IMG/VR virus record: IMGVR_UViG_3300025121_000011
Coordinates: 124,001 to 188,000 of that record
Reading direction: 5' to 3' (one strand)
DNA: 64,000 nt
The position numbers were made by a program, and so were the translations under genes. A model generated the notes under the pieces. It saw only the letters and a program-made list of their open reading frames with translations. It ran no database searches and was not told where the DNA came from. How positions within the stretch are numbered: position 1 is the first letter of the stretch; every line of letters starts with the position of its first letter. Shown piece by piece: positions 29,579 to 64,000 of this stretch.

Positions 29579-29586
29579 GAGAAGCC

Positions 29587-47146: not shown

Positions 47147-47191
47147 AAAGCATTATTTAAATAAAATAATAATAATAACTATAGGATTAAA

Positions 47192-47451: not shown

Positions 47452-47496
47452 GAATAAAATAGATCGCGCCATACATAATATAGTATATTCTATTTC

Positions 47497-47538: not shown

Positions 47539-47573
47539 AGCCTGGTATGCAAAAGATCTAAAGAGGAGTATCG

Positions 47574-48680
47574 GTGTCAAATATATTAAAAATCAGAAGC
47601 AGAGGCATAATGGGAACCCATCACAGTTGGGCTGTAGTGATGAGATCTCTATTTGCAGTGTGGATTTCTCAGGGACATGATAGTTATATCACAACCACAA
47701 ATTCATATGATGGATTTCCTGAGGAATGGCGTAAGTTTTGTGATCGCGAATATCATCGTCCGGATTTAGATATTTGTTACACTTTGCCTAGAAATTTTAA
47801 TGCGAGATTCATGAAGAAGTCGCGTAATAAAATGGCAATTTATAATTATGAAACAAGTTTACTACCAAAGGAGTGGGTGAAGGATGTTTCTCATATTGAT
47901 TTTTTGTTGCCATCTAGTGAATTTTCAAAATGGGTATTTACTAATAGTGGAATTAGTTCTGATAAATGTGTTGTGATTCCGCATGGAATAAATCAAAGAG
48001 ATTTTTTAGATAAATCTACCATTACATTAGGCAATAATAAAACTTTTAGATTTTTAAATATTTCGATTCCTCATTATAGGAAGAATATAAATGTTTTATT
48101 AGAAGCATATTACGCTGCTTTTGATGCATCGGATGATGTGTGTTTGGTTTTAAAAACAGATTTAAATCCGCCAAAGGATCGAAAAAGATTTTTATTTGAA
48201 GCGGATATAGCAGAACAAATACAGCATATCCAAGTGTATTATAATAAAATTGGTAAGAGTTTGCCTCAAGTGGAGATAGTACAGCAAAGTTTGCCAAGTA
48301 TGATTCCTCTTTATAATTCATGTAATTGTCTTGTTAGCGCATCTTCTTCTGAGGGATTTGGATTACCATTATTAGAAGGTCTTGCTGCACATATGTTGGT
48401 TGTTTCTCCGCGTTGCACAGGACAATTAGATTTTTTAAATGATCAAAATTCTATATTATATAATGTAAAAGAAGTGATAGCTCCTCCACATTATCAATAT
48501 TGGAGGCCAACAGATGGTGCTACAACCTTTATGCCGCATAAAGATGATTTAGCCGAGGCTATGTTAAGTGCTTATAATAATTATCAAGTGCTACAAGAAT
48601 CATTTGAAGCTGGTCGACAAGAGGTTCTTAAACAATTTACATGGGAAAGTGCCGCTAATAAGATTTTGGAATTATTATGA
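47574..48680 (+). CDS. Glycosyltransferase, GT-B fold (GT4-like)
   Basis: GTG start; VIPHGIN, HYRKNINVLLEAY, YNSCNCLVSASSSEGFGLPLLEG, FTWESAA. Confidence 0.9.
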   Translation: MSNILKIRSRGIMGTHHSWAVVMRSLFAVWISQGHDSYITTTNSYDGFPEEWRKFCDREYHRPDLDICYTLPRNFNARFMKKSRNKMAIYNYETSLLPKEWVKDVSHIDFLLPSSEFSKWVFTNSGISSDKCVVIPHGINQRDFLDKSTITLGNNKTFRFLNISIPHYRKNINVLLEAYYAAFDASDDVCLVLKTDLNPPKDRKRFLFEADIAEQIQHIQVYYNKIGKSLPQVEIVQQSLPSMIPLYNSCNCLVSASSSEGFGLPLLEGLAAHMLVVSPRCTGQLDFLNDQNSILYNVKEVIAPPHYQYWRPTDGATTFMPHKDDLAEAMLSAYNNYQVLQESFEAGRQEVLKQFTWESAANKILELL

Positions 48681-50212
48681 TTATATTTGATTCTTTAAAA
48701 CATAAAAATTGGAATGGTAGGGGTTTAACTAAAAGTGGCGACAATTTAGTAATAGTAAAGTCAGCAAATTTAAAACATAAAGTTAATCTCACCATGGGAA
48801 CGTATACTCTTAAGATTATAGCCAAGAAACGTAGTGGCAATGGTGTTATTAATTTTTCTATTCAAAATACAGATAAGGTTTGTTATTTAAATAAAAACAT
48901 AACTCTCTCGAATTCTACTTGGACTGAATATGTATTTCATTTTGAATGTACGCAAGATGTTTTATCAGAGTTAATTATATCTAGAAGCAGCAATGTTTAT
49001 GGGTCAATAGAAATTGGAAGACTTTTAGTTCAAAAACAGGTTATTAATAATACTTCAATAGAAAAAAAGATAATAGTTCCTATTTATACTCATGAAGTAA
49101 AAGAAGGAATATATTCGAGTTATCTAATGAAAAATTCAAAGCAAAAGATTGGAATCATAATTCCATATAGCATATATGGTGGGGGAGAGATATATTTACA
49201 AGAGATATTGAATCATGTTGATGAGCATCAAGTCAATATAACTATGATATATTCCAAACCTAATCCAATTAAGTTTAAGCTTCCTGATGCGATTCAACAT
49301 CGTGATGCAAAGGTTCCAGAACATCTTGTTGGAGTTTTAAAATCTGAAAGATTTGATTATATAGTTTTTTATAATAGTTTATCTATTTATAATATTTTAT
49401 CTCAGCTTAAAGAGAGCGGAGAAATAAATTCTAAGATTATTGAAATCTATCATAGTGATTTTTTATGGCCAGATGCCGTGGCCAAAATAAGAACTCGAAA
49501 AGGAGTGGATGAATTCATTTCTGTTTCGTCAAGTCTCGGAAAAGATATAATCGGGATTAAAGATGCAAATAAACACGTCATACCTGTAAGTATAGATATT
49601 GAACGATTTATTCCACGTAATAAAATACAGATAAGGCAACAGCTCGGGATAACCACATCTGGTAGAATCTTTGGAACGGTGGCTAGATTGTCTCCAGAAA
49701 AGAATTTAACTTATATTTTAGAATTGGCTAAAATTCTTCGTGATGATTTATTCTTAATAATAGGGGATGGCCCGCAAAAATCTTTCCTTGAACTTAATAA
49801 GCCGAACAACGTAATTTTAATGGGATTTCAAAACAAGATAGAATATTATTATAACGCTTTAGATGCTTTTATATTGCCCTCTATTATTGAGGGTACTCCA
49901 ATTTCTATTTTAGAAGCTATGTCCTCTGGAATACCAGTATATGCATCCAAGGTTGGAGCAATACCAGATATATTGCAGCATTCATATAGTGGATGGTTTT
50001 TATCTATGAATCTTAAAAAAGATTGCCAGCTCATTGAGCAATCTTGGATCGATGCAGATATCGTTGAGCACGCCAGAGAATATATCCGGGAAAATCATTT
50101 GATTAAGGATAACGTAGATATGTTTTACAATTTGCTATTAAATAGAAATAACTTTTACAGTATGTCTTCTGATTCAATAGGTAGACTGAAATTCTCAGGA
50201 GAGTTCATCTAA
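48677..50212 (+). CDS. GT4 glycosyltransferase with N-terminal carbohydrate-binding-like beta-sandwich
   Basis: N-terminal about 120 aa with TYTLKIIAK...WTEYVFHF (galactose-binding-domain-like); GT4 motifs YGGGE, GTVARLSPEKN, PSIIEGTPISILEAM. Confidence 0.85.
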   Translation: MIIFDSLKHKNWNGRGLTKSGDNLVIVKSANLKHKVNLTMGTYTLKIIAKKRSGNGVINFSIQNTDKVCYLNKNITLSNSTWTEYVFHFECTQDVLSELIISRSSNVYGSIEIGRLLVQKQVINNTSIEKKIIVPIYTHEVKEGIYSSYLMKNSKQKIGIIIPYSIYGGGEIYLQEILNHVDEHQVNITMIYSKPNPIKFKLPDAIQHRDAKVPEHLVGVLKSERFDYIVFYNSLSIYNILSQLKESGEINSKIIEIYHSDFLWPDAVAKIRTRKGVDEFISVSSSLGKDIIGIKDANKHVIPVSIDIERFIPRNKIQIRQQLGITTSGRIFGTVARLSPEKNLTYILELAKILRDDLFLIIGDGPQKSFLELNKPNNVILMGFQNKIEYYYNALDAFILPSIIEGTPISILEAMSSGIPVYASKVGAIPDILQHSYSGWFLSMNLKKDCQLIEQSWIDADIVEHAREYIRENHLIKDNVDMFYNLLLNRNNFYSMSSDSIGRLKFSGEFI

Positions 50213-51327
50213 TGAATTCTGTTAGAATGTTTGGACCGTTGGGTTCTGCATCTGGATATGCCAATGCAGTAAGAAATTTTGCATTGGCATTTTCTAAGTC
50301 TGAAATACCGACCAAATTTCACTTTGGGCAAAAAGCCGAAGCAGAATATTCTTTATTTATGGAGAGTCTTAAGCGTTACTCAGGAGATACAAATATAGAT
50401 TTTTATTTACATGGTCCACCTTGGAGTACACATCGTAGTAGGGCATATAAAATTGGTTATTTTTATTGGGAGGCGGATCGTCTGCCGTTGAGTTGGGAAA
50501 GAATGATAAGTCAAGTAAATGAATTATGGGTACCTTGTCAATTAGTTGAACAAGCATGTAGAAAGGCTAAATTTAAAGGTCCCATTAAACTAATTCCAAC
50601 GCCTTCGGATCCGTGGGAAACAAATCAAAGATTAATTATTCCATCAGATGTGTCAAATCAATATATTGTTTCAGATGATGTATTTAAATTTTATTCTATT
50701 TTTCAATGGCATGAGCGTAAAGGATACAAGGAATTACTACAAGCTTATTATAAAACTTTTAATGAAGATGATAATGTAATTTTGATATTAAAGGTGAATC
50801 CACTTAATATTAGGGGCTATACCAGAGATAAAATTAAAGTTGATATTATGGAAATAAAAAGAAGACTTAATCAAAAATACTTTCCAAGAGTCTATTTATC
50901 TAGAGATATTTTAAATGTATCACACATTCAGGCTTTACATAATACAGCTGATTGTTATGTTTCGGCTCATCATGGAGAGGGATGGGGAGTGCCAATACAT
51001 GATGCTATGTTAGCTGAGAATCATTTGATTGTACCAAAATTTGGAGGAGTGACAGATTACTTGGATGAAAATAGTGCTAATTTAGTAGATTTTAAAATAG
51101 GCCCAGTTAGTGGAATGGAGTGGTCCAATCTTTATGGTTCTTATCAAAATTGGGCTTATCCTGGTGTCAATTCTTTGTCCCAGAAAATGCGAGAAGTTTT
51201 TGATAATCCACTACATTATTATCCGAAAACTATCAAGGCAAAAGAAATTGCAGAAACAATGACCACAAGTGCTGTTGCAAGATTGATTAATAAAGAATTA
51301 ATTATACCTAGGAAGAGTAATGCTTAA
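50212..51327 (+). CDS. Glycosyltransferase, GT-B fold (GT4-like)
   Basis: SASGYANAVR, FQWHERKGY, DCYVSAHHGEGWGVPIHDAM; similar in layout to 47574..48680. Confidence 0.9.
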   Translation: MNSVRMFGPLGSASGYANAVRNFALAFSKSEIPTKFHFGQKAEAEYSLFMESLKRYSGDTNIDFYLHGPPWSTHRSRAYKIGYFYWEADRLPLSWERMISQVNELWVPCQLVEQACRKAKFKGPIKLIPTPSDPWETNQRLIIPSDVSNQYIVSDDVFKFYSIFQWHERKGYKELLQAYYKTFNEDDNVILILKVNPLNIRGYTRDKIKVDIMEIKRRLNQKYFPRVYLSRDILNVSHIQALHNTADCYVSAHHGEGWGVPIHDAMLAENHLIVPKFGGVTDYLDENSANLVDFKIGPVSGMEWSNLYGSYQNWAYPGVNSLSQKMREVFDNPLHYYPKTIKAKEIAETMTTSAVARLINKELIIPRKSNA

Positions 51328-52240
51328 AATTTTAGATTATTATTGTCATCAAGGGCATCAGAGGGAATTCTTTCGCACAGGCCATGAGTTTTATCTAACT
51401 GGCCTAGATTCGCTTAAGCCAAATTGGAATACTGCCCATAGGCCGCTAGGCTCTAATGTAATTTTAATTGACGAGAGAGCCGCTCATGGGCTAAAATTTG
51501 ATATAGTGATTGTTCGCTCTCCGCTTAATCCCAAAAGATATTCTCGTTTTATAGAGAAGGGAGCTATTCCAGTTGCCGTCAGTCAAAATACAACTCCATT
51601 TGCGGTAGATTCTAAAGTTAGACATATAGTATGGAACTCTTCGGTTGCTATGAACAATAGTTCCGGATTTTATCCAAAGAATATTAAGCATCATTACATA
51701 GTACATGGATTTGATCCCAATGAATTCCGTCCGATAGATGGCATAATAAAAAATGGAAGAGTGTTATCCGTCTCTAATGTATTTAAAAAGCGAGATCATT
51801 TTTTAGATTACAAAAAATTTGATCTTGTTAATCAAGAGCTTGGAAATATCTGTGATGTACTAGGACATGGGAATAATGATATTAATTCGTCGATTGGAGA
51901 GGCGTCTAGTTTTAATGAATTAATACGTTATCATAATCTGTATAATGTTTATTTTAATACAACAATTCGGTCTGCAATGCCAAGAAGTCGAGCAGAAGCA
52001 ATTATGAGTGGCATACCAACTTGTACAACTTGTAATTATGATATTGGAAAATATTTTACTCATAATAAAGATATAGTGTATGCGAATACTAAAGATGAAA
52101 TGATTAGAGAAATTAAAAAGCTTTTGGCAAATCCAGAGTTAGCACATAAAATAGGGGTAATGGGTAGAGAAACCTCTATCAAGCACTTCCATATTGATGA
52201 CTATCTGTTAAAATGGAATAATGTCTTTACAGGATTATAA
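51320..52240 (+). CDS. Glycosyltransferase, GT-B fold (divergent)
   Basis: YIVHGFDPNEF, YFNTTIRSAMPRSRAEAIMSGIP, LLANPELAHKIGVMGRE, WNNVF; acceptor-domain start LKILDYYCHQGH. Confidence 0.75.
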   Translation: MLKILDYYCHQGHQREFFRTGHEFYLTGLDSLKPNWNTAHRPLGSNVILIDERAAHGLKFDIVIVRSPLNPKRYSRFIEKGAIPVAVSQNTTPFAVDSKVRHIVWNSSVAMNNSSGFYPKNIKHHYIVHGFDPNEFRPIDGIIKNGRVLSVSNVFKKRDHFLDYKKFDLVNQELGNICDVLGHGNNDINSSIGEASSFNELIRYHNLYNVYFNTTIRSAMPRSRAEAIMSGIPTCTTCNYDIGKYFTHNKDIVYANTKDEMIREIKKLLANPELAHKIGVMGRETSIKHFHIDDYLLKWNNVFTGL

Positions 52241-53745
52241 TGAAAGTTTTATTAGTGGTGGATAGCTATAATTGGGCTCTCTATAATAGGGCCATTAGTC
52301 TACAGTATTATATTAAGGATCATGATTTTTTAATTAAAAGTTTTAAAGATGTAGATAATATAGACTTTAATAAGTTTGATATTGTATATATTCTTAATTG
52401 GCCTATACATGGCTATATCCCTAATAAAATTAATAAAAAACAGAGACGAAGATATAGACTTATAACTTCCGTTTCAAGTCATATCAATAGGCCACATGCT
52501 TCAAGATTAAATGGAATTTTTAAATATTACGATGCTATTAGTTGCTCTAATATCTCTCTGTATGAAGAATTCAAGCCTCATTATAATAATGTATTCTATA
52601 CCCCATTTGGAGTTGACACTATTACCTTTACACCAAAAACAAATCCATCTGATTATAAAAACATAGTTGGTTGGGTTGGAAATAAAAATAGAGCAGTAAA
52701 GCGATTTTCCGAAATTAAAGAGGCTGTAACATCTATTCCAAATATTGAATTTAAATATGTAGATGAATCTTATGGCTATAGCAGAGCTAAAATGGCAGAT
52801 TATTATAATTCTATCGGCTGTTTGGTTTGCTTTAGTGAGTCAGAGGGAACCCCAAATCCCATTTTAGAAGCAGCGGCATGTGGTCGTCCGATTATCTCTA
52901 CTTTGGTTGGAAATGTATCGAAACTTCTGGAATCTACAAAAGGAATATATATAGTAAACACTAAAGAGGAAATTATCGAGACAATTGGTAATATTAGAAA
53001 TTATGATATGCATGCTGTTGGAATGGAAAATAGAAATGCTATCAGTCATGATTGGTCTTGGGGCCGACAATATTTAAACTTTATTCAATTTTTAGGAGTG
53101 AAACATACGGCTATGGCAGACATAAATAAAATTATTTGGTTTTGGAATGTGAATGATGCAGAGACAGCAAAATATAATAGAGTAACCTCATCTAAAAGTG
53201 AAGCAGTATGGGGAGAGAAGTCCATTTCCTCTATTATTGAAACAGATATTATTTCTCATGTTGGAGATTTAAAGGGTAAAAAAGTTCTGGATTTTGGATG
53301 CGGAGTTGGCAGAATATTAAAATATACAGCTAAGTATTCAGATAATTGTCACGGAGTAGATATTGCTCCGAATATGTTAAAGTTTGCTAAAGAGTATATT
53401 GATAATCCAAATGTTGTTTTACGTCAATCTAATGGAAAGCAGCTTCCATACTCAGAAGGAGAATTTGATGTAATTTATTCATTTCATGTTCTACAGCATA
53501 TTCCTACCAGAGAAATGCTGGTTGATACTTTAAAAGAGATAAAGAGGGTTCTTCGCAAAAATGGAAAAGCAGTATTACATTTCACTCACAAAGTTAGTGA
53601 ATTTGATAGAGACGCTGGCCAATTTGCAGGATACAGGCCGACACCTGAAAACGCCGAGAAGTTAATTAAGGAGGCTGGATTTACATTAATTAAAACAAAT
53701 ATTAAAGCAGATAAGCATTTTTTATTGTATTTAACTAAGGCGTAA
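52240..53745 (+). CDS. GT4 glycosyltransferase fused to class I SAM-dependent methyltransferase
   Basis: N-terminal SESEGTPNPILEAAACGRPIIST; C-terminal VLDFGCGVGR...GVDIAPNML...LPYSEGEFDVIYSFHVLQH...RVLRKNG. Confidence 0.9.
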   Translation: MKVLLVVDSYNWALYNRAISLQYYIKDHDFLIKSFKDVDNIDFNKFDIVYILNWPIHGYIPNKINKKQRRRYRLITSVSSHINRPHASRLNGIFKYYDAISCSNISLYEEFKPHYNNVFYTPFGVDTITFTPKTNPSDYKNIVGWVGNKNRAVKRFSEIKEAVTSIPNIEFKYVDESYGYSRAKMADYYNSIGCLVCFSESEGTPNPILEAAACGRPIISTLVGNVSKLLESTKGIYIVNTKEEIIETIGNIRNYDMHAVGMENRNAISHDWSWGRQYLNFIQFLGVKHTAMADINKIIWFWNVNDAETAKYNRVTSSKSEAVWGEKSISSIIETDIISHVGDLKGKKVLDFGCGVGRILKYTAKYSDNCHGVDIAPNMLKFAKEYIDNPNVVLRQSNGKQLPYSEGEFDVIYSFHVLQHIPTREMLVDTLKEIKRVLRKNGKAVLHFTHKVSEFDRDAGQFAGYRPTPENAEKLIKEAGFTLIKTNIKADKHFLLYLTKA

Positions 53746-53749
53746 TCTA

Positions 53750-56630: not shown

Positions 56631-56632
56631 AT

Positions 56633-57955: not shown

Positions 57956-57963
57956 GAATGTAA

Positions 57964-58740
57964 ATGAATAACAAAGTAACCTTTATATTTATATTTACTA
58001 CCGGAAGAACAGGCACAGCAATGCTTGCCCAAATTTTCGGTTTAGAAAAATATAATAAGCAAAAATTGTATTTTACTGATAGCAATCGTAATGTTGTGGC
58101 ACACGAATGCTGGGATGATATTCCAGTTGATTTAATTAAGAATACAAAGTTTGGTTCCACAGAATATATTAAAATTTGTGATAATTATCTTGTTAAAAAG
58201 CATAAGGAAATTCTTTCAAAATCTAAATCTATACAGAATATTTTTATTACCGATCATAAGTTGGGCCGTTATTTTTCTGATTATTTAGTTAGCAATATCA
58301 AGTTTGATTATAAAATTATATTGTTACGCCGAAACAAAGAAGATGTCGTTGCCTCATTTTTAGAGAAAATGGCAAAAGTAAAAAATAGATCAACCAAGAG
58401 TCAATATGTTTATTTTCAGAAAAGACTCTGGAAAAATTCCTTTTATTCTCCATTTGATATGTCTGCGCTTTATCCGGTTGATCCAATAGATTGGGCTATT
58501 CGAGATGAAGAAGAGCGTATAAACTGGTACTTTGATGAGGTTAAAAGACAATGGAATAGGTTGTCTAATATTATACCAATAGATAAGAGACTGGAAGTTA
58601 AATTTGAAAACATTATAGGTGGCAGCGAAAGAGATTTAAATGGAGAAATAATTCAAAATAGTGAATTATATAAAATAAGCAAATTTATTAATTTGCCATA
58701 TAAAAAAGCTTTTTTAGATAGAAAGGTAAACGCCAGATAA
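57964..58740 (+). CDS. Sulfotransferase family protein
   Basis: FIFTTGRTGTAML (5'-phosphosulfate-binding loop), VAHE, IILLRRNKEDVVASF (3'-phosphate-binding motif), RLEVKFENI. Confidence 0.7.
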   Translation: MNNKVTFIFIFTTGRTGTAMLAQIFGLEKYNKQKLYFTDSNRNVVAHECWDDIPVDLIKNTKFGSTEYIKICDNYLVKKHKEILSKSKSIQNIFITDHKLGRYFSDYLVSNIKFDYKIILLRRNKEDVVASFLEKMAKVKNRSTKSQYVYFQKRLWKNSFYSPFDMSALYPVDPIDWAIRDEEERINWYFDEVKRQWNRLSNIIPIDKRLEVKFENIIGGSERDLNGEIIQNSELYKISKFINLPYKKAFLDRKVNAR

Positions 58741-58750
58741 AGGGGCCGTT

Positions 58751-59848
58751 ATGAAAATTGTTATCTTAGCTGCGGGGAAGGGTGCTCGCTTTAAAAGAGA
58801 CGTTCCAAAGTGTCTTTCAATGTTAGGACAAGAAACTGTTGTTTCTCGGCAAATTAACCAAATCATTAAGTTTATTCCTAATAGTGAAATTATAGTTGTT
58901 ACCGGATTTAAAAATGATTTGGTAAAGAATTATATTATTGGATTAGATTCAAGCATTAAGATTGTTTGCAATAATAAATTTGAAAAAGACCAGAATATTT
59001 ATTCTGTTTTAATAGGTATTAAAGATCTTAACGAAGGTGTTTTAATTTTAGAAGGTGATTGTGTTTTTTCAGATTTTGCTTTTCAGGAAATATCGAAAGC
59101 AATTGATAATAATTCATCGAATGCGTTATTTTTTTTAGGACAACAGGGTGATCAAAGTATGGCGAATGGAGTTGTAAAATTTAATAATAGGAATCAATTT
59201 AGTGATTTCTTAATAGGCTTAAAAAACACTTCTATTGCTGGTTACCACAGTATGATAGGCGTGACTTGGATTCCGGTTGATATGATATCAGAATATCGAG
59301 AGAATTTAGAATCCGAAATAGTCATATCTATGAAGGAATATTACTTTAAACCACTATTAAATCCACCATTATCTTTTAATGTTTTGTGTGCAGTAATAAA
59401 GGGTGATACTTGTACGTTTAATACTCAAGATGAATTTAAGTTAGCTAAAAAAATTTCAAGTAATAATATTGATATAGTTTTATATCCGGTAAGTAAATTA
59501 ATACATATAGAGGAATATAATTCAGAAAGAGTACAGTGGCTCTTAGATAAAATTCTTCTTGAGAAGACATGGACACGGCCTCTTTGTATTAGTTCAGAAG
59601 GTTTAGTAATGGATGGACAACACAGAATGGAGGTTGCGAAGAGGATGGGGCTTAATTTTGTGCCGGTTTTAATATTTGATTATAGTCAAGTTCCGATTTT
59701 TTCATTACGAGATAAAATATCCTTTACCTATCATGATGTAATAGAAAGAGCATTGGCTGGAAATATTTATCCATACAAAACGGTAAAGCACATATTTAAT
59801 GAAGATCTTTTAAATTGTAATTATACATTAGAGAGTTTATATGATTAA
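58751..59848 (+). CDS. Nucleotidyltransferase (LicC/PntC-like) fused to a ParB/sulfiredoxin-fold domain
   Basis: VILAAGKGARF...PKCL, ILEGD, FNTQDEF; C-terminal IHIEEY...TWTRPLCI...VMDGQHRMEVAKRMGLNFVPV. Confidence 0.8.
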   Translation: MKIVILAAGKGARFKRDVPKCLSMLGQETVVSRQINQIIKFIPNSEIIVVTGFKNDLVKNYIIGLDSSIKIVCNNKFEKDQNIYSVLIGIKDLNEGVLILEGDCVFSDFAFQEISKAIDNNSSNALFFLGQQGDQSMANGVVKFNNRNQFSDFLIGLKNTSIAGYHSMIGVTWIPVDMISEYRENLESEIVISMKEYYFKPLLNPPLSFNVLCAVIKGDTCTFNTQDEFKLAKKISSNNIDIVLYPVSKLIHIEEYNSERVQWLLDKILLEKTWTRPLCISSEGLVMDGQHRMEVAKRMGLNFVPVLIFDYSQVPIFSLRDKISFTYHDVIERALAGNIYPYKTVKHIFNEDLLNCNYTLESLYD

Positions 59849-61061
59849 CGTTCGAACCATAACCCTTCAAAGTAAACCTTCTGAAGCAACATTAACTACT
59901 TGTATAAACCAGTTAGAATTATTTAAAAATTTGATTGAAAAATTTGATAAAATATATTTACAAGCAAGAACCAGCAGGGTTGTGATTGAAACGGTGGACT
60001 CCGCAGAGTCATATAAGCAATCCCTCTTACTGATAGAAGCATGTAAGTTTCATAATTTTTGGGGAATTTGCGTTCCAATTAATTTATACCAAGACCCTAA
60101 TAATATTAAATACGCTTATGATTTATTAGAAGAAGAATCTGTTTTTATTAATCTTATCTCTACGGAAGATGATTCTATGAGTTTATATGGAGTCAAATCT
60201 GCTGCCAAATTTATTTTTGATGCATCAAGACAAGATCCCATGCATAATTTTAGAATAGGGGCGTCTTCCGTAAAACAAAACAAAACACCATTCTTTCCGT
60301 TTTCTACAGCGGTAAATAATGGAGAATTTACCGTTGGGCTAGAGCTTATAGATTTTTTTCTTAATGTTATAGAGACTTATGATAGACAACCATTATCAGA
60401 GATTAGAAAGAAATTATGCGAATCTCTATCATCTGAATTAGATGACTTAGAAAAGATATGTGAACAATTAAGCAAAGAGTTTGGGCTATCTTTTGGAGGA
60501 GTTGACTTATCTATAGCTCCATATCCGTATCCATTAGAGGATCAAAGTGTAGTAACCTTGATAGAAAAAATTGGGAATATGGGGCGCTCTCGCGGTGAAC
60601 CTATATTTGAATTTGGATCAAATGGAACATATTTTATTAATGCCTTTCTTACTAATATTTTGAAACAGACTGCCTTAGCTCACGGAAGTGTTGGATTTAA
60701 TGGTGTAATGTATTCTCTACTGGAAGATACTTATCTTGGGCTGAGATATGAGGAAGAGGCTTTTGATGTTAATTTATTAAAATTTTTATCAACATCTTGT
60801 GGTTGCGGTGTAGACATGATGCCATTGGATGGAGATACAGATATTAATACTATAGCTTCCATAATTATGGATAATTTTACGGTATCATCTTTGTTACAGA
60901 AACCACTAGGAATTAGACTTCTACCGATTCCCGATTCTAGAATTGGAGATCGAACAAAATTTCATCATCTTTTTTTTACCAATACAAAAATTCGGAGTAT
61001 AGGGTCTGGGGTTACTTTTCAGAATCTGCCAACACAGGATTCTATTTATAAGATTAAATAA
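59841..61061 (+). CDS. DUF711 (UPF0210, PFL-like fold) family protein
   Basis: VRTITL, GVDLSIAPYP, GT...AFLT..LK, GFNGVMYSLLED, CGCGVDM, KPLGIRLLPIP...GD. Confidence 0.8.
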   Translation: MINVRTITLQSKPSEATLTTCINQLELFKNLIEKFDKIYLQARTSRVVIETVDSAESYKQSLLLIEACKFHNFWGICVPINLYQDPNNIKYAYDLLEEESVFINLISTEDDSMSLYGVKSAAKFIFDASRQDPMHNFRIGASSVKQNKTPFFPFSTAVNNGEFTVGLELIDFFLNVIETYDRQPLSEIRKKLCESLSSELDDLEKICEQLSKEFGLSFGGVDLSIAPYPYPLEDQSVVTLIEKIGNMGRSRGEPIFEFGSNGTYFINAFLTNILKQTALAHGSVGFNGVMYSLLEDTYLGLRYEEEAFDVNLLKFLSTSCGCGVDMMPLDGDTDINTIASIIMDNFTVSSLLQKPLGIRLLPIPDSRIGDRTKFHHLFFTNTKIRSIGSGVTFQNLPTQDSIYKIK

Positions 61062-61074
61062 AGAAGAGGAATGC

Positions 61075-61782
61075 ATGAATCAAGACGATATTAAAGAGAT
61101 TTTCAATAAGCGTTCTAATAAGTTAAAAGATCATGATCCGTGGAGATATGGAGAGAGTCTATCATTAAAGACGGATCTTATCGAGATAGAATGGATTAGA
61201 AATAACTGTAAGTATAAGAAAGCCTTATTAGATATTGGTTGTGGAACAGGGCGGCATGTTATTGAATTATCAGGAGATTTTGATGAGATTTTGGCCGCAG
61301 ATTTTGCTCAAGGAAATATAAATGTTTTAAATACAAAAATAGCTGAGATGAATATCTGCAATATACAAACCGTAGTTTCTTCAGCTCAGGACATCACTTT
61401 GCAAGCCGAAAGAAGAAAATTTGACATCATTATCGGAATAGGGCTTGTCCAATATTTAAATAATGATGAGTTTTTTAGTTTCTTCGAAGATTGTCACAGT
61501 CTTTTAAATAATCATGGCAGACTTTTGTTAAAAATTCCAATGTCAGAGACAGAAACATTTTCTTTTGATGGATATTCTGAATTACTAGAAAGTGAATATT
61601 TCTCTTTTTATAGAAATATAAATGATATTTTCAAAGGATTCTATAAATGGTTTAGCTTATATAAACTCGAAAGGGTTTTTACATTGGAAAATTTGGGTAA
61701 AGAATTATGGATAATAGAAAATCACGATAACTCTAAGCAGATATGGTTTTTGCTGGTCAAAAAAGAAACGGAGGAATTATGA
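61075..61782 (+). CDS. Class I SAM-dependent methyltransferase
   Basis: LLDIGCGTGRH, ADFAQGNI, FDIIIGIGLVQYL, LLNNHGRLLL. Confidence 0.9.
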   Translation: MNQDDIKEIFNKRSNKLKDHDPWRYGESLSLKTDLIEIEWIRNNCKYKKALLDIGCGTGRHVIELSGDFDEILAADFAQGNINVLNTKIAEMNICNIQTVVSSAQDITLQAERRKFDIIIGIGLVQYLNNDEFFSFFEDCHSLLNNHGRLLLKIPMSETETFSFDGYSELLESEYFSFYRNINDIFKGFYKWFSLYKLERVFTLENLGKELWIIENHDNSKQIWFLLVKKETEEL

Positions 61783-61877
61783 ATGCGATAGGCTTGGTTG
61801 GAAAAGGTTTTGTAGGCGGCGCTTTATTCGATAGCTTTACTAAACGCAAACAAGAGGTAATAGTATATGATAAATGA
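61779..61877 (+). pseudogene. 5' remnant (32 codons) of a second UDP-glucose-dehydrogenase-family gene
   Basis: GGAGG SD; MNAIGLVGKGFVGGALFDSFTKRKQEVIVYDK*; 16/29 identical to the N-terminus of the intact gene at 62022. Confidence 0.75.
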
Positions 61878-62010
61878 TTTATCAAAAGAATATTTTGACT
61901 TAATAAAAATAGGAAGAACTTTTACAAGACATAATTTAGGCACTTTAATCAATGAGATTGAAAGACGTGAAGATACAAAGCAAAATTGGTTTTTATTCGA
62001 AAAGAAATAA
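61867..62010 (+). pseudogene. 3' remnant of a second methyltransferase paralog
   Basis: EYFDLIKIGRTFTRHNLGTLINEIERREDTKQNWFLFEKK* (61888-62010) aligns without gaps at 18/40 identity to 61645-61764 of the intact methyltransferase. Confidence 0.7.
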
Positions 62011-62021
62011 CGGAGTATAAG

Positions 62022-62807
62022 ATGAAAATAGGATTAATTGGTATTGGATTTGTTGGTGGAGCTATTAGGGATTTTTTTATTAAAACAGATGAGACGCTTT
62101 TATTATATGACAAATATAATGATAATTATAATGATAAAGAATCCATATTGGAAGCGGATATGATTTTTATATGCGTTCCAACTCCACATATGGAAAATAA
62201 TGGATATGATATTTCTGCTATAGAAGATTCGTTGTCTTTTCTAGATTCTCATAAATATAACGGACTAGTAATAATTAAAAGCACTGTTCTTCCTGGAACA
62301 ATAGATTCGTTTTCGAAAAAATTTAAATTGAAAATTATACATAATCCGGAATTTCTAACCGCAAGAACGGCGTCTAAAGATTTTGAAAATCAAAAGGTAA
62401 TTATTATCGGGGCGAAAGATTCAGATATAATATGCGAATTAGTAGAGTTATATACAAAACATTTTCCGGATTCTATTATTAATATTGTTAAACCGTCTGA
62501 ATCAGAATCAATAAAGATTATGGCGAACAGCTTTTACTCTACGAAAATTCAAATTCTAAATGAATTCTATGGCTTATGTCAGGCTCTTGGTATAGACTAT
62601 GAAGTTGTTAAAAATAATATAGTAGGTCTTGGCTGGGTAAATAATATGCACACCTCTGTGCCTGGCCATGATGGAAAACTAAGTTATGGCGGAGCATGCT
62701 TTATAAAAGATACTCGTGCTCTTTTAGACCAAATGAAGAAAGCACATGTTAATCATCAGGTTTTAGAAGGAGTTGTTAATGAGAGAAATATCATGCGAGA
62801 TGATTAA
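62022..62807 (+). CDS. UDP-glucose/GDP-mannose dehydrogenase family protein (short form)
   Basis: GGAG SD and ATG at 62022; IGLIGIGFVG, FICVPTP, IKSTVLPGT, HNPEFL, KIMANSF, YGGACFIKD. Ends without the usual C-terminal domain. Confidence 0.9.
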   Translation: MKIGLIGIGFVGGAIRDFFIKTDETLLLYDKYNDNYNDKESILEADMIFICVPTPHMENNGYDISAIEDSLSFLDSHKYNGLVIIKSTVLPGTIDSFSKKFKLKIIHNPEFLTARTASKDFENQKVIIIGAKDSDIICELVELYTKHFPDSIINIVKPSESESIKIMANSFYSTKIQILNEFYGLCQALGIDYEVVKNNIVGLGWVNNMHTSVPGHDGKLSYGGACFIKDTRALLDQMKKAHVNHQVLEGVVNERNIMRDD

Positions 62808-62825
62808 TAATTTAGGATTTTTATC

Positions 62826-63770
62826 ATGAGTATTAATCGAGTTAAAGAAGGGTTTTATTATACAGATGGAAATATAACCGGAAAGGCACATAAAAGTTGG
62901 TATCGTGGAAAGACATGTAATTTTAATCCAAATATTAAAAATATTTTAGAAGTAGATAGTGTAGATAAATATATTTTAGCTGGATGGTTACCAGATGCCC
63001 CATTTATTGATAAAACAACTGTAATAACAACATTTGGCAGTTGTTTTGCTTTGTATATATCTGAATACCTTGATAAAAAAGGCTATAACGCTTCTCTTAA
63101 GGATGGAAATAATCTAATTGATTTTAAAGCAGGGGTAAATAATACATTTGCGATTAGACAACTGATAGAGTGGGTGTACAATGGGAAAAGCTTTGCAGAG
63201 GAAACATGGCATAGAGATGATAAAAGTATAATTGAAAAGAGTGAATCTCTTAGAAGTAAAACCTTAGAAAGATTTTTAAAAACTGATGTTTTTATAATTA
63301 CATTAGGTCTTAGCGAAATTTGGTATAATAAAGAGACTAATGATGTCTTTTGGAGGGCAATACCAGAAGATCAATTCGACCATAATAAGCACGGATTTAG
63401 AGTCTCTACCTTTCAGGAAAATAAAGATAATATTCGTTATATTTACAACACTATTATATCATTTAATAAGAATGCTAAAGTAATTTTTACAATATCTCCT
63501 GTTCCATTGGTTGCAACATTTCGCCCAGTGTCATGTCTATCTGCAAATTCAGTCTCAAAAGCTATTCTAAGAGCGGCAATAGATGAGTTTTATCGAGAGG
63601 AAAATGGAGATAATATTGACAATATATTTTATTGGCCTTCTTATGAGATTGTAGAAAAGATATTTAATTATAAATTTAATGGTGGGGCTTATGACTTCGA
63701 CTATCGACATATTAAAAAAGAATGTGTAACAGAGATTATGAGATTATTTGGTCAGTATTATACGATTTAA
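62826..63770 (+). CDS. GSCFA domain protein (SGNH/GDSL-like)
   Basis: TFGSCFA, FIITLGLSEIW, VIFTISPVPLVATF, ANSVSKAILR, YWPSYEIV, DYRH. Confidence 0.9.
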   Translation: MSINRVKEGFYYTDGNITGKAHKSWYRGKTCNFNPNIKNILEVDSVDKYILAGWLPDAPFIDKTTVITTFGSCFALYISEYLDKKGYNASLKDGNNLIDFKAGVNNTFAIRQLIEWVYNGKSFAEETWHRDDKSIIEKSESLRSKTLERFLKTDVFIITLGLSEIWYNKETNDVFWRAIPEDQFDHNKHGFRVSTFQENKDNIRYIYNTIISFNKNAKVIFTISPVPLVATFRPVSCLSANSVSKAILRAAIDEFYREENGDNIDNIFYWPSYEIVEKIFNYKFNGGAYDFDYRHIKKECVTEIMRLFGQYYTI

Positions 63771-63902
63771 CATAAATCTTTTGTAATGATTTGATATTAA
63801 TCATTTAAAATATTAAGAAAATTGCATTGATGGAATAACATTTACACGGTAAATTATATATTGCGCTGCCGATTCTGGCAATAGAATTACAAAGGATACT
63901 AT

Positions 63903-64000
63903 ATGAATGCATTGGTAACTGGTGGGGCAGGCTTTATTGGAAGTCATTTGGTTGATGCGTTAGTAGCGGATCAACATTTTGATAAAATACTTGTGATAGA
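63903..64000 (+). CDS. NAD-dependent epimerase/dehydratase (3'-truncated by the window end)
   Basis: MNALVTGGAGFIGSHLVDAL...VID, the extended-SDR Rossmann motif. Confidence 0.85.
   Translation, partial: MNALVTGGAGFIGSHLVDALVADQHFDKILVI

What the first reader, a model, noticed from the sequence alone, without database searches (positions are those of the whole stretch)
47574..64000. Glycan build-and-decorate operon of 16+ kb directly behind a giant phage tail module
Seen: 8 GT-B glycosyltransferases in a row, then an AlkP-superfamily enzyme, sulfotransferase, nucleotidyltransferase-ParB fusion, DUF711, methyltransferase, UDP-sugar dehydrogenase, GSCFA protein and epimerase, mostly translationally coupled and co-oriented with the tail genes. 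No Wzx/Wzy/ABC exporter, polyprenyl-phosphate initiating transferase or any membrane protein appears in the visible part. Established: some mycobacteriophages glycosylate capsid and tail-tube proteins with their own GTs, and giant viruses glycosylate their fibrils. Inference: a cytoplasmic pathway making a complex methylated, sulfated and possibly phospho-substituted glycan, most plausibly for the virion surface. Alternatives are DNA hypermodification or host-surface remodelling.
Basis: partly seen in the sequence, partly recalled or inferred. Interest (0 to 1): 0.8.

Follow-up and report, generated by a model that had tools for sequence, protein, structure and literature searches.

The report
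Jumbo-phage glycan build-and-decorate module
A 335-kb uncultured jumbo phage carries, right behind its tail genes, a membrane-free gene set of about 28 kb that builds and decorates a complex sugar chain; its first four enzymes are shared by the whole phage lineage, the rest is swapped between relatives, and what the sugar is attached to is still unknown.

Summary
Window 47574-64000 holds eight consecutive GT-B glycosyltransferases, the fifth fused to a SAM methyltransferase. They are followed by a sulfatase-fold enzyme, a sulfotransferase, a nucleotidyltransferase fused to a SerK/SbnI-like ParB/Srx kinase, DUF711, a methyltransferase, a short UDP-sugar dehydrogenase, a GSCFA protein and an epimerase. 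None has a membrane segment.

The window is part of a 335,169-bp IMG/VR phage contig, and independent assemblies cross the 47.4-kb junction without a difference. The module runs about 11 kb past the window end, adding an intein-split GDP-mannose dehydratase and two or three more GTs, and stops at a tubulin gene.

In seven of seven relatives examined, two giant tail-module proteins are followed by orthologues of GT1-GT3, and by GT4 in all six contigs that reach it. The genes behind them differ: Kdo/nonulosonate genes, a ManNAc/deacetylase set, or the window's type.

The fusion, DUF711 and the methyltransferase form a conserved unit found in 57 of 63 cellular loci. It resembles the CDP-threonine "post-glycosylation modification" pathway of flagellin. 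The sulfatase-fold enzyme has Thr in place of formylglycine and always sits next to genes that make cytidylyl-activated head groups.

The acceptor is unresolved: virion proteins about 0.45, host envelope about 0.3, DNA unlikely. This is a new variant of a known kind.

The parts
29147..32901 (+). gp25-like (29147-29578) and gp6-like (29587-32901) baseplate wedge proteins. They anchor the upstream region as a contractile-tail module.
   Evidence: PHROG phrog_2669/120 and phrog_6 (E 2e-41). Sheath at 6149-9367.
32901..42536 (+). 3211-aa giant tail-module protein with a ConA-like lectin domain near its C-terminus. Its length is conserved in all relatives (3208-3267 aa).
   Evidence: Pfam Laminin_G_3 E 3e-10. 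65% identity in L063. Synteny.
42599..47146 (+). 1515-aa conserved structural protein directly upstream of the GT core. It is a candidate acceptor or fibre (inferred).
   Evidence: 50-66% identical full-length orthologues of 1511-1523 aa precede GT1 in 7 of 7 relatives. No family hit.
47192..47573 (+). Variable spacer: a 74-aa Cys-containing ORF (47192-47416), then an AT-rich inverted repeat and 157 nt before GT1.
   Evidence: The small ORFs at this place are not homologous between relatives, and some relatives hold HNH endonuclease genes here.
47574..52240 (+). Conserved core: GT1 (47574-48680), GT2 (48677-50212, with an N-terminal CBM-like jelly-roll), GT3 (50212-51327), GT4 (51320-52240). 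All are GT-B/GT4-type.
   Evidence: Pfam. Sequence-confirmed orthologues at 36-72% identity in the four DNA-compared loci L065/L063, L070, L071 and L072. L073 and the DNA-less P0004 and P0007 contigs match by gene length and Pfam only; GT2 of L073 is 50% identical. The P0007 contig ends in a partial ORF at the GT4 position. More than 120 cluster representatives of GT1 at 50% identity or more. GT1 model pLDDT 95, GT-B fold. CBM-like lead.
52240..56630 (+). Second tier: GT5 fused to a SAM methyltransferase (52240-53745), GT6 (53750-54625), GT7 (54622-55731), GT8 (55728-56630). Shared only with a sub-lineage.
   Evidence: Pfam. 57-69% orthologues in L074. The same domain and length series on the contig of P0004. 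Absent from L065, L070, L071, L072 and L073.
56627..57955 (+). Sulfatase-fold (S1-like) AlkP-superfamily enzyme with a Thr nucleophile. Proposed head-group phosphotransferase or phosphodiesterase acting on the glycan (inferred).
   Evidence: Pfam Sulfatase. T-L-M-C-H aligns where sulfatases have S/C-x-P-x-R. D15 and S229-D230-H231-G232 invariant, T54 conserved in 90% or more. Model pLDDT 84.6, nearest to carbohydrate and choline sulfatases at TM 0.5-0.59. Gene context.
57964..58740 (+). PAPS-type sulfotransferase, inserted between the sulfatase-fold gene and the fusion gene. Absent from L074 and L139.
   Evidence: Only one relative in 5.8 billion clusters (47% identity).
58751..61782 (+). Conserved three-gene head-group unit: nucleotidyltransferase plus SerK/SbnI-like ParB/Srx kinase fusion (58751-59848), DUF711 (59841-61061), and a class I SAM methyltransferase (61075-61782).
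   Evidence: Same order at 44-52% identity in L074 and in a Paceibacterota contig, L075, where it lies between LicD and a TagF-like gene. Operon seen in 57 of 63 cellular loci.
61779..62010 (+). Recombination scar: a fragment of a second UGDH 5' end followed by a fragment of a second methyltransferase 3' end. Both are closer to the L074 alleles than to the window's own genes.
   Evidence: local alignment scores 111 against 86, and 146 against 95.
62022..62807 (+). Short two-domain nucleotide-sugar dehydrogenase. The catalytic GGxCxxKD motif is present and the C-terminal UDP-binding domain is absent.
   Evidence: A 270-aa orthologue at 45% identity in L074.
62826..63770 (+). GSCFA-family (SGNH-like) protein. 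It is specific to this window relative to L074.
   Evidence: Pfam PF08885, E 1e-40. No counterpart in L074.
63905..64000 (+). Start of a 319-aa NAD-dependent epimerase (TviC/GalE-like). The module continues beyond the window to window-equivalent position about 75,344.
   Evidence: Downstream genes in L057 and L066.

Best explanation
This is a phage-encoded glycan assembly-and-decoration module whose proteins all lack membrane segments. It belongs to an uncultured jumbo-phage lineage with genomes of about 290-420 kb.

Shown:
- It lies directly after the baseplate and giant tail-protein genes and runs for about 28 kb. About 16.4 kb of that lie in the window.
- It has three tiers. A core of four GT4-type transferases is inherited vertically by every relative examined. 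A second tier, GT5-GT8, is shared by a sub-lineage. An outer set of sugar-nucleotide and decorating enzymes differs between close relatives and shows recombination scars and homing endonucleases at its borders.

Inferred mechanism:
- GT1-GT4 build a conserved core oligosaccharide on a conserved acceptor in the cytoplasm.
- GT5-GT8, and two or three later GTs, extend it.
- The sugars come from UDP-uronic acid (dehydrogenase plus 4-epimerase), GDP-6-deoxyhexose (GDP-mannose dehydratase) and possibly a heptose or glycerol-phosphate nucleotide.
- The chain is O-methylated and sulfated.
- It also receives a phosphodiester-linked small head group. The kinase-nucleotidyltransferase fusion, DUF711 and the methyltransferase make this as a CDP-activated, methylated hydroxy-amino-acid-like compound. 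The Thr-nucleophile sulfatase-fold enzyme would transfer it.

Most likely acceptor, not shown: virion structural proteins of the tail, such as the adjacent conserved 1515-aa and 3211-aa proteins. That would give the particle a strain-variable, anionic glycan coat.
For: Phage origin and integrity:
- The window is 100% identical to IMGVR_UViG_3300025121_000011, 335,169 bp.
- The stretch 47147-48363 is 100% identical in a separate assembly.
- Logan contigs of three runs span 44800-50500 with no difference.
- Downstream lie a TubZ/PhuZ-like tubulin and a helicase, not housekeeping genes.

Gene content. No membrane segments.

Tiered conservation:
- The giant proteins followed by GT1-GT3 occur in 7 of 7 relatives. 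GT4 follows in the six contigs that reach it; the P0007 contig ends in a partial ORF at that position.
- Where DNA was held and compared (L065/L063, L070, L071, L072), GT identities of 36-72% are about as high as the neighbouring structural protein's 50-66%.
- GT1 has more than 120 cluster representatives at 50% identity or more, on contigs up to 420 kb.
- GT5-GT8 occur only in L074 and on the P0004 contig.
- Outer sets differ: Kdo plus NeuB in L065, L070, L071 and L072; Epimerase_2/PIG-L/TviD-like in L073; the window type in L074.
- Scar. Endonuclease genes.

Head-group unit:
- SerK and SbnI hits, with both domains' motifs invariant.
- The trio is 44-49% identical in a Paceibacterota contig, where it lies between LicD and a TagF-like gene.
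- The operon is present in 57 of 63 cellular loci. In two Pseudomonas it lies directly after flgJ-flgK-flgL.
- A characterised analogue exists: FtaABCD / PA1088-1091, which works through CDP-N-methylthreonine (PMC10714395, PMC11833859, bioRxiv 10.64898/2026.02.12.704994).

Sulfatase-fold enzyme: Thr replaces formylglycine, and it is adjacent to cytidylyl head-group genes in 4 of 4 contexts, including a cytidylyltransferase-PEP-mutase phosphonate cluster.

For a virion acceptor:
- The position is late-module and co-oriented.
- The core GTs are lineage core genes.
- The best solved structural match of GT1 is a chlorovirus GT, and matches among viral proteins are better still (TM 0.74-0.78).
- There is precedent in mycobacteriophages (as summarised in PMC12619734) and in giant viruses (PMC9614988).
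Against: - No acceptor was or could be shown, and no RNA run was listed that holds the locus, so timing of expression is unknown.
- In the window an inverted repeat and 157 nt separate GT1 from the tail genes, so co-transcription with late genes is not established.
- The 3211-aa and 1515-aa proteins have no tail-fibre family hit.
- Kdo genes in most relatives and a heptose-type adenylyltransferase-like gene point as much to LPS-core chemistry as to a protein glycan.
- Similar GT-rich islands beside tail-fibre genes in pelagimyophages were interpreted as host O-chain modification (PMC7029224).
- The role of the sulfatase-fold enzyme as a transferase rests on gene neighbourhood only. Its closest folds are hydrolytic sulfatases.
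- The head group's identity is unknown. DUF711 has no known function.
Confidence: 0.5

Rival explanations
1. Host-envelope remodelling. The soluble phage enzymes act at the cytoplasmic face of the host membrane on a host lipid-linked intermediate, either lipid A-Kdo as in LPS-core/LOS assembly or a host Und-PP-sugar. Host MsbA/Lpt or host flippases export the altered glycolipid. This changes the cell surface during a long infection and blocks superinfection or adsorption of progeny to infected cells.
For: - LPS-core assembly needs only soluble or peripheral GTs and no dedicated exporter (established knowledge), so the lack of Wzx/Wzy/ABC genes does not argue against it.
- Most relatives carry a near-complete CMP-Kdo pathway (SIS isomerase, KdsA, HAD phosphatase, cytidylyltransferase) plus NeuB.
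- The window lineage has an RfaE-domain-II-like adenylyltransferase (TIGR02199, 56 bits).
- WaaG is among the structural matches of GT1.
- This is the interpretation given to the analogous island of pelagimyophages (PMC7029224).
- A universally conserved acceptor, lipid A-Kdo2, would also explain a conserved four-GT core.
Against: - No Kdo transferase (GT30), heptosyltransferase (GT9), initiating phosphoglycosyl transferase or any membrane-anchoring segment was found.
- The core GTs behave as vertically inherited lineage core genes next to structural genes, rather than as host-specific accessory genes.
- The position behind the tail genes suggests late expression, which is late for a surface change.
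- The host is unknown.
Confidence: 0.3
2. DNA hypermodification. The GTs glycosylate a modified base, such as 5-hydroxymethyl-pyrimidine, in phage DNA to evade host nucleases. The outer genes supply unusual sugars.
For: - Phage GT-A and GT-B enzymes put mono- to trisaccharides on 5hmC, including Kdo, heptose and hexuronic acid (bioRxiv 10.1101/2023.12.21.572611).
- Strain-level variation is also expected under pressure from nucleases.
- A dCMP deaminase gene ends the cassette in L074.
Against: - Ten to eleven GTs, a sulfotransferase, a phospho-head-group unit and a CBM-like domain on GT2 far exceed any DNA glycan described.
- No C5-methyltransferase, TET/5mYOX or thymidylate-synthase-like hydroxymethylase lies between window-equivalent positions 47.5 and 80 kb.
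- T4 beta-glucosyltransferase is not among the 50 best structural matches of GT1.
- The methyltransferases are small-molecule class I types.
- The DNA assembled normally and identically from several runs, which is only weak evidence.
Confidence: 0.06
3. Another acceptor. The product is a free or protein-primed intracellular or secreted oligo- or polysaccharide, or it modifies a non-virion phage protein or a small molecule.
For: - GT4 enzymes include small-molecule and soluble-polymer transferases (BshA, MshA, GlgM, glycogen synthase) among the matches of GT1 and GT2.
- All enzymes are soluble.
Against: - There is no obvious use for a strain-variable, sulfated and phospho-decorated soluble glycan in a lytic cycle.
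- The conserved position behind structural genes is not explained.
Confidence: 0.1
4. It is not phage DNA: a bacterial O-antigen or capsule locus joined to phage sequence by mis-assembly near 47.4 kb.
For: Many genes have their nearest family names in bacterial cell-wall biosynthesis. The head-group trio is 44-49% identical to a Paceibacterota contig.
Against: - The junction is identical in an independent IMG/VR assembly.
- It is spanned without differences by 82-144-kb Logan contigs of three runs.
- The same junction (1515-aa protein followed by GT1) occurs in seven diverged relatives.
- GC content and GC skew are continuous across it.
- Phage genes (tubulin, helicase) follow the module.
Confidence: 0.01

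Closest known systems
'Host recognition cluster' of pelagimyophages and cyanomyophages: a hypervariable island holding tail-fibre genes plus glycosyltransferases and LPS-type sugar genes (PMC7029224)
   Same: - A large aquatic or environmental myovirus.
- A GT-rich, strain-variable island placed among or next to tail-fibre genes.
- Sugar-nucleotide genes such as UDP-glucose dehydrogenase and rfaE-like genes.
- Function untested.
   Different: - Different phage lineage. The sheath has only one weak hit among 50,697 deposited phage genomes.
- Here a fixed four-GT core precedes nested variable tiers.
- The GTs are GT4-type, not mainly GT8.
- There are also a sulfotransferase, a phospho-head-group unit and a Thr-type sulfatase-fold enzyme.
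Giant-virus glycogene clusters: Mimivirus clade-specific clusters that glycosylate fibrils, and the 38-kb carbohydrate cluster of CroV with a Kdo pathway (PMC9614988)
   Same: - A virus-encoded, host-independent cytoplasmic glycan machinery with bacterial-type sugars.
- Clusters specific to clades.
- Kdo genes in relatives. Sulfate-metabolism genes are reported in one Mimivirus-clade cluster.
- GT1's best structural matches include chlorovirus and Klosneuvirus-type GTs.
   Different: - Those are eukaryotic viruses.
- For Mimivirus, attachment to fibril proteins is shown experimentally. Here nothing is shown.
Virion glycosylation in mycobacteriophages: phage GTs that glycosylate capsid and tail-tube C-termini (Freeman et al. 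2023, as cited in PMC12619734)
   Same: A phage's own GT genes acting in the cytoplasm on structural proteins would be the same principle.
   Different: - Those systems have two to four genes and simple glycans.
- This one has about 28 genes with sugar-nucleotide synthesis, sulfation and phospho-head-group chemistry.
- No S/T-rich C-terminal extension was identified here.
FtaABCD (C. difficile type A) and PA1088-PA1091 (P. aeruginosa b-type) flagellin post-glycosylation modification via CDP-(N-methyl)threonine (PMC4441256, PMC10714395, PMC11833859, bioRxiv 10.64898/2026.02.12.704994)
   Same: - The same logic: phosphorylate a hydroxy-amino acid, add CMP, N-methylate with a minimal class I methyltransferase, and transfer the phospho-head group to a sugar on a protein-bound glycan.
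- In two Pseudomonas the DUF711-type operon occupies the flagellin glycosylation position after flgL.
- In a Paceibacterota contig the unit is flanked by a TagF-like gene, as FtaD is.
   Different: - The kinase is SerK/SbnI-like (ParB/Srx fold) and fused to the nucleotidyltransferase, not a HAD-type FtaA.
- There is an extra DUF711 protein.
- The phage has no TagF or LicD gene; a Thr-type sulfatase-fold enzyme sits there instead.
Phage DNA glycan hypermodification clusters (bioRxiv 10.1101/2023.12.21.572611)
   Same: Phage GT-B enzymes, cytidylyltransferases, and Kdo, heptose or uronic-acid chemistry.
   Different: - No neighbouring C5-MT, 5mYOX or ThyS-like gene.
- No T4-BGT-like match.
- Far more transferases and decorations than any DNA glycan known.
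'Moraphages', aquatic jumbo phages with four glycosyltransferase orthogroups in their core genome (PMC12619734)
   Same: Jumbo phages known from metagenomes in which four GT families are core genes. Their function is undiscussed beyond general options.
   Different: - Relatedness could not be tested, because the moraphage genomes were not available to the tools.
- Those genomes reach 307 kb at most and no tubulin is mentioned.
- This is a lead only.

Membership tests
GT-B fold, CAZy GT4-like glycosyltransferases (GT1-GT8) | C-terminal Glycos_transf_1-type nucleotide-sugar-binding domain | tested here: met
   Pfam hits in all eight ORFs, seven of them above the gathering score. GT3 scores 19.4 bits, below the 26.4 cut-off.
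GT-B fold, CAZy GT4-like glycosyltransferases (GT1-GT8) | Two-Rossmann-domain GT-B architecture | tested here: met
   Tested for GT1 only: model pLDDT 95.3, TM 0.65-0.71 to solved GT4 enzymes. The other seven were not modelled.
GT-B fold, CAZy GT4-like glycosyltransferases (GT1-GT8) | E-x7-E type motif in the C-terminal domain | tested here: met
   E260-G-F-G-L-P-L-L-E268 is invariant in 32 GT1 homologues. The corresponding E405...E413 is invariant in GT2. The others were not checked.
Type I (S1, formylglycine) sulfatases | C/S-x-P-x-R motif that is converted to formylglycine | tested here: not met
   T-L-M-C-H aligns to S-T-P-A/S-R of two sulfatases. Thr is conserved in 90% or more of the subfamily and no member has the motif.
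Type I (S1, formylglycine) sulfatases | Sulfatase two-domain fold and metal ligands | tested here: met
   Model pLDDT 84.6; the top 50 PDB matches are almost all S1 sulfatases at TM 0.5-0.59. D15, D230 and H231 are invariant.
PAPS-dependent sulfotransferases | Sulfotransferase fold and family profile; 5'-PSB loop and 3'-PB motif | tested here: met
   PF00685 at 23.6 bits (cut-off 22). Atlas features 0.94-0.97 and TM 0.65-0.70 to sulfotransferase clusters. TGRTGT and RRN-x-E-D-x-x-x-S seen by eye. Activity not tested.
UDP-glucose/GDP-mannose dehydrogenase family | N-terminal NAD domain, central domain with catalytic Cys, and C-terminal UDP-binding domain | tested here: not met
   The N-terminal and central domains and GGACFIKD are present. 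The C-terminal domain is absent at 261-273 aa. The short form is conserved in L074, so it is a variant and not a truncation artefact.
Fta / PA1088-1091 CDP-threonine post-glycosylation modification pathway | HAD-type phosphotransferase FtaA | tested here: not met
   No HAD protein in the unit. A SerK/SbnI-like ParB/Srx domain is present instead.
Fta / PA1088-1091 CDP-threonine post-glycosylation modification pathway | Cytidylyltransferase (FtaB) and small class I N-methyltransferase (FtaC) | tested here: inconclusive
   NTP_transf_3-type nucleotidyltransferase and a 235-aa class I methyltransferase are present.
Fta / PA1088-1091 CDP-threonine post-glycosylation modification pathway | TagF-like CDP-alcohol phosphotransferase (FtaD) | tested here: not met
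   No Glyphos_transf or LicD hit in the phage module. Both are present next to the unit in the Paceibacterota contig L075.
Wzx/Wzy- or ABC-dependent O-antigen/capsule locus | Initiating polyprenyl-phosphate transferase, flippase or ABC exporter, polymerase; membrane proteins | tested here: not met
   No such Pfam family and no hydrophobic segment in 28 module proteins from 47.5 to 75.3 kb.
Phage DNA sugar-hypermodification gene clusters | GT next to a C5-methyltransferase plus 5mYOX/TET, or to a thymidylate-synthase-like hydroxymethylase | tested here: not met
   None lies between 47.5 and about 80 kb. The rest of the 335-kb genome was not read.
Phage DNA sugar-hypermodification gene clusters | Modified bases in virion DNA | not testable with these tools
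   Needs nucleoside LC-MS or raw long-read signal.
Virion protein glycosylation systems (mycobacteriophage or giant-virus type) | Glycan covalently bound to capsid, tail or fibril protein | not testable with these tools
   Only position, synteny and analogy are available.
   PHROG hits. A 335-kb IMG/VR contig with 56 sheath relatives.

The most novel reading that the evidence does not exclude
The lineage dresses its tail or baseplate giant proteins with a 'phage O-antigen': a conserved four-sugar core, lineage-specific extensions and strain-specific anionic caps. The caps would be Kdo or nonulosonate in most members, and uronate, sulfate and a phosphodiester-linked methylated amino acid here. 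The cap of this phage would be made through a CDP-amino-acid intermediate by a kinase-cytidylyltransferase fusion with DUF711. A previously unrecognised class of Thr-nucleophile, sulfatase-fold head-group transferases, which also serves phosphonate decoration in bacteria, would install it.
Probability: 0.2. Interest if true: 0.85.

Novelty: new variant of a known kind. Interest (0 to 1): 0.6.

Why it matters
- GT-rich islands beside tail genes of large environmental phages have been noted for twenty years without a tested function. This lineage offers an unusually clean case. It has a fixed four-enzyme core that can be co-expressed with the neighbouring conserved structural protein, and natural 'swap' variants of the outer genes.
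- If the glycan sits on the virion, tailed phages would join giant viruses in making their own complex, variable glycocalyx. That bears on adsorption, particle stability, grazing and immune recognition.
- Two enzyme leads have value whatever the acceptor is. The first is a widespread, uncharacterised operon (nucleotidyltransferase, SerK-like kinase, DUF711, methyltransferase, often a racemase) that probably makes a CDP-activated amino-acid-type head group. The second is a small Thr-type sulfatase-fold family that always sits beside cytidylyl head-group genes.
- Both leads can be tested in cultured bacteria such as Pseudomonas mangrovi and Roseovarius litoreus.

Tried and rejected
- Megablast of the module against 50,697 deposited phage genomes found nothing. 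tblastn of the sheath found one weak hit, so there is no cultured relative.
- The search for related loci with single proteins (DUF711, the sulfatase-fold enzyme, the 1515-aa protein, the GT1 alignment) mostly found only the window's own contig and one relative. Context in relatives had to be reached through protein searches and the look-up of encoding contigs.
- The sigma-70 promoter and terminator scans gave counts no higher than shuffled sequence. Inspection of intergenic regions gave no convincing shared late-promoter motif. No statement on transcription units is made.
- No RNA run holding the locus was listed, so there is no expression evidence.
- No tRNA genes in the window.
- PHROG, Pfam and Atlas searches gave no usable family for the 3211-aa and 1515-aa proteins, apart from one lectin-like domain.
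- The small ORF before GT1 is not conserved. A Stc1-like hit in a relative was too weak to use.
- The idea that the trio makes phosphocholine from serine was considered. It was dropped to 'head group unknown', because methyltransferase matches are generic and DUF711 is uncharacterised.
- Calling the sulfatase-family enzyme a sulfatase partner of the sulfotransferase was rejected. The formylglycine motif is absent, and relatives keep the enzyme without any sulfotransferase.
- Membership in the 'moraphage' lineage could not be tested.
- The 334-aa and 317-aa proteins behind GT4 in Kdo-type relatives gave no Kdo-transferase or other hit.

Full report
**What is there.**
- Eight consecutive ORFs (47574-56630) carry the C-terminal domain of GT-B, group-1 glycosyltransferases.
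- The third scores below Pfam's cut-off, but it is a paralogue of GT1 and is conserved in relatives.
- They are followed by:
  - a sulfatase/AlkP-family protein (56627-57955);
  - a sulfotransferase (57964-58740), for which Pfam is marginal but the ESM Atlas gives 0.94-0.97 by features and TM about 0.7 by structure;
  - a nucleotidyltransferase whose C-terminal third matches the ParB/Srx-fold kinases SerK and SbnI (58751-59848), with PF02195 on relatives;
  - DUF711 (59841-61061);
  - a 235-aa methyltransferase (61075-61782);
  - a nucleotide-sugar dehydrogenase with only two of its three domains (62022-62807);
  - a GSCFA protein (62826-63770);
  - the start of an epimerase (63905 onward).
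- Most junctions overlap or are under 14 nt apart.
- No protein has a hydrophobic stretch of membrane-helix strength. The maximum is 1.44, against 2.12 for a GtrA control.

**It is phage DNA, and the join is real.**
- The sheath and DUF711 queries return the window at 100% identity inside IMGVR_UViG_3300025121_000011, a contig of 335,169 bp.
- PHROG profiles identify a 1072-aa sheath, a tube-like protein, and gp25-like and gp6-like baseplate proteins upstream.
- The stretch 47147-48363 is identical in another IMG/VR assembly.
- Logan contigs of 82-144 kb from three runs cross 44800-50500 without a single difference.
- GC content and skew are continuous across the junction.
- The runs that hold the sequence are labelled groundwater and soil metagenomes.
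- Past the window end, the locus (L057, L066) continues with:
  - the complete TviC/GalE-like epimerase;
  - an RfaE-domain-II/TagD-like nucleotidyltransferase;
  - a GDP-mannose 4,6-dehydratase interrupted by a LAGLIDADG intein;
  - an asparagine-synthase-like ATP-pyrophosphatase;
  - a weak GT-B protein, a GT2-family GT and another GT4.
- A TubZ/PhuZ-like tubulin, a 1205-aa protein and a helicase follow. The module therefore spans window-equivalent positions 47.5-75.3 kb and holds 10-11 GTs.
- There is no flippase, polymerase, ABC exporter or initiating transferase anywhere in it.

**Relatives show a tiered design.**
- GT1 has more than 120 cluster representatives at 50% identity or more over its full length, on contigs up to 420 kb.
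- In seven relatives the order is the same: a protein of about 3210 aa, a protein of about 1515 aa, a short variable spacer, then GT1-GT2-GT3. GT4 follows in the six contigs that reach that position; the P0007 contig ends in a partial ORF there.
- In the four loci compared at sequence level (L065/L063, L070, L071, L072), identities to the window are 52-72% for GT1, 36-52% for GT2, 55-68% for GT3 and 47-57% for GT4. The neighbouring 1515-aa protein is at 50-66%. L073 and the DNA-less P0004 and P0007 contigs match by gene length and Pfam families.
- The core GTs therefore evolve like the structural genes beside them.
- Behind GT4 the content changes:
  - Four relatives have two unknown proteins, a HAD phosphatase, NeuB, two cytidylyltransferases, KdsA and a SIS isomerase. 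These are Kdo and nonulosonate pathways.
  - One has UDP-GlcNAc 2-epimerase, a methyltransferase, a GT, a PIG-L deacetylase and a TviD-like protein.
  - Two share GT5-GT8 with the window (57-69% identity in L074). They then insert a DUF2334 protein, an FkbM methyltransferase and a flavoprotein before the sulfatase-fold gene.
- Against L074, the window alone has the sulfotransferase, the GSCFA protein and the intein-bearing dehydratase.
- Traces of exchange are visible:
  - Between the window's methyltransferase and dehydrogenase lie fragments of a second dehydrogenase 5' end and a second methyltransferase 3' end. Both are closer to the L074 alleles than to the window's own genes.
  - Free-standing LAGLIDADG and HNH endonuclease genes sit at the borders in relatives.

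**The 'oddities' form one unit.**
- The fusion protein, DUF711 and the methyltransferase keep the same order at 44-52% identity in two places. One is the phage relative L074. The other is a contig named Candidatus Paceibacterota, where the unit is flanked by LicD and a TagF-like glycerophosphotransferase within a cell-wall glycan locus.
- A scan of species-representative genomes found 63 loci across bacteria and archaea. Counts out of 63: the ParB-like domain 63, a nucleotidyltransferase 59, DUF711 57, a second nucleotidyltransferase 49, the methyltransferase 43, and an Asp/Glu racemase 34.
- In Pseudomonas mangrovi and another Pseudomonas, the operon lies directly after flgJ-flgK-flgL. That is where pseudomonads keep their flagellin glycosylation genes. 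Only 2 of the 63 loci show this.
- The closest characterised logic is the FtaABCD / PA1088-1091 pathway. Phosphothreonine is made, converted to CDP-threonine, N-methylated by a minimal class I methyltransferase, and transferred by a TagF-like enzyme to the sugar on flagellin.
- The phage unit has a different kinase and an extra DUF711 protein, so it is an analogue and not a member.
- I infer that it makes a CDP-activated, methylated hydroxy-amino-acid-like head group. Its identity is unknown.

**The sulfatase-family enzyme.**
- In alignments to solved sulfatases, T-L-M-C-H stands where S/C-x-P-x-R is converted to formylglycine.
- An exhaustive search found only 11 representatives below E 1e-30 among 1.84 billion.
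- In this small subfamily the Thr is conserved in 90% or more, and the metal ligands D15, D230 and H231 are invariant.
- The model (pLDDT 84.6) is nearest to carbohydrate and choline sulfatases, TM 0.5-0.59.
- In the window, in L074 and in L139, the gene lies just upstream of the fusion and DUF711. In L140 a 39%-identical member lies just upstream of a cytidylyltransferase-PEP-mutase fusion with a decarboxylase and an alcohol dehydrogenase, which is a nucleotide-activated phosphonate pathway. Such pathways are described in PMC6697681, where LicD-like enzymes are the suspected transferases.
- In four of four contexts the gene therefore accompanies genes for a cytidylyl-activated head group.
- I propose that it moves that head group to the glycan through a phospho-Thr intermediate, as Thr-type AlkP-superfamily transferases do with lipid donors (established knowledge for EptA and LtaS). 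A trimming phosphodiesterase is the alternative. This rests on gene neighbourhood only.

**What the glycan is attached to.** Nothing here shows it.

For virion proteins:
- The place is behind and co-oriented with tail genes in every relative.
- The core GTs have core-gene status.
- All parts are soluble.
- A CBM-like jelly-roll sits at the N-terminus of GT2 (Atlas TM 0.63-0.68, a lead only).
- GT1's best solved structural match is a chlorovirus GT (TM 0.71), and viral proteins match better still at 0.74-0.78.
- There are precedents in mycobacteriophages and giant viruses.

For the host envelope:
- LPS-core assembly needs neither flippase nor polymerase genes of its own.
- Kdo and heptose-type genes are hallmarks of that chemistry.
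- The analogous island of pelagimyophages was read that way.

Against DNA:
- The module has far more steps than any described DNA glycan.
- No C5-MT, TET or hydroxymethylase gene is nearby.
- There is no T4-BGT-like match.
- Most of the genome remains unread, however.

I put the virion at about 0.45, the host envelope at about 0.3, another acceptor at about 0.1 and DNA at about 0.06.

**Comparison and novelty.**
- GT-rich variable islands beside tail-fibre genes are known from pelagimyophages and cyanomyophages (PMC7029224).
- Four GT orthogroups are core genes of the 'moraphages' (PMC12619734). Relatedness to them could not be tested.
- Clade-specific glycogene clusters are established in giant viruses (PMC9614988).
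- Three things appear to be new here:
  - the explicit core, second-tier and outer-tier architecture with recombination scars;
  - a sulfotransferase combined with a CDP-head-group unit in a phage;
  - the two enzyme leads, namely the DUF711 operon and the Thr-type sulfatase-fold family.
- I rate it a new variant of a known kind, with interest 0.6.

Noticed in passing
L057 15883-18027 (window-equivalent 65723-67867): The GDP-mannose 4,6-dehydratase is 714 aa. The two halves of the enzyme are separated by an insert of about 370 aa with a LAGLIDADG domain, which looks like an intein inside a sugar-nucleotide enzyme of a phage.
   Followed up: partly
window 61779-62010: Fragments of a second dehydrogenase 5' end and a second methyltransferase 3' end lie between the intact methyltransferase and dehydrogenase. 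Both are closer to the alleles of relative L074. This is a footprint of unequal recombination between cassette variants followed by deletion.
   Followed up: yes
L065 13570-14433; L070 9006-9692; L073 9159-9551: Free-standing LAGLIDADG and HNH homing-endonuclease genes sit exactly at the borders of the GT core in relatives. They may drive cassette exchange.
   Followed up: no
window 62022-62807; L074 13014-13826: A two-domain nucleotide-sugar dehydrogenase of 261-273 aa, with the catalytic Cys motif present and no C-terminal UDP-binding domain, is conserved between relatives at 45% identity. A dehydrogenase gene also follows the cluster in L140. How it binds its substrate is unexplained.
   Followed up: partly
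L076-L138 (63 loci), e.g. L113 6908-11543: A widespread, apparently uncharacterised operon: nucleotidyltransferase, SerK-like ParB/Srx kinase, (second nucleotidyltransferase), DUF711, methyltransferase, (Asp/Glu racemase). It occurs in Pseudomonadota, Patescibacteria, Bacillota, Bacteroidota and archaea. In two Pseudomonas it directly follows flgL.
   Followed up: partly
L140 1349-5758: A member of the Thr-type sulfatase-fold subfamily lies directly upstream of a cytidylyltransferase-PEP-mutase fusion, a TPP decarboxylase and an Fe-alcohol dehydrogenase. This suggests the same enzyme family also serves phosphonate decoration.
   Followed up: no
L066 15223-16674 (window-equivalent 75322-76773): A TubZ/PhuZ-like tubulin gene immediately follows the glycan module, then a 1205-aa protein and a DEAD/ResIII helicase.
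   Followed up: no
window 48677-49130 (GT2 residues 1-150): GT2 carries an N-terminal beta-sandwich that resembles CBM4_9 and galactose-binding-like carbohydrate-binding modules (Atlas TM 0.63-0.68). A lectin-like domain on a transferase hints at a glycan acceptor.
   Followed up: partly
window 6149-9367: The tail sheath protein is 1072 aa, far longer than usual. It has 56 relatives in IMG/VR (43-77% identity), on contigs up to 335 kb, but only one weak hit among deposited phage genomes. The lineage is widespread but uncultured.
   Followed up: partly
whole window: Runs that hold this exact sequence are labelled groundwater and soil metagenomes, from at least five studies. GT1 relatives sit on contigs of 285-420 kb, so genome size in the lineage may exceed the 335 kb of this contig.
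   Followed up: no
window 57964-58740: The sulfotransferase has a single relative (47% identity) among 5.8 billion protein clusters. Atlas nevertheless lists sulfotransferase clusters made up mostly of phage proteins, so phage sulfotransferases exist but this one is nearly an orphan.
   Followed up: partly
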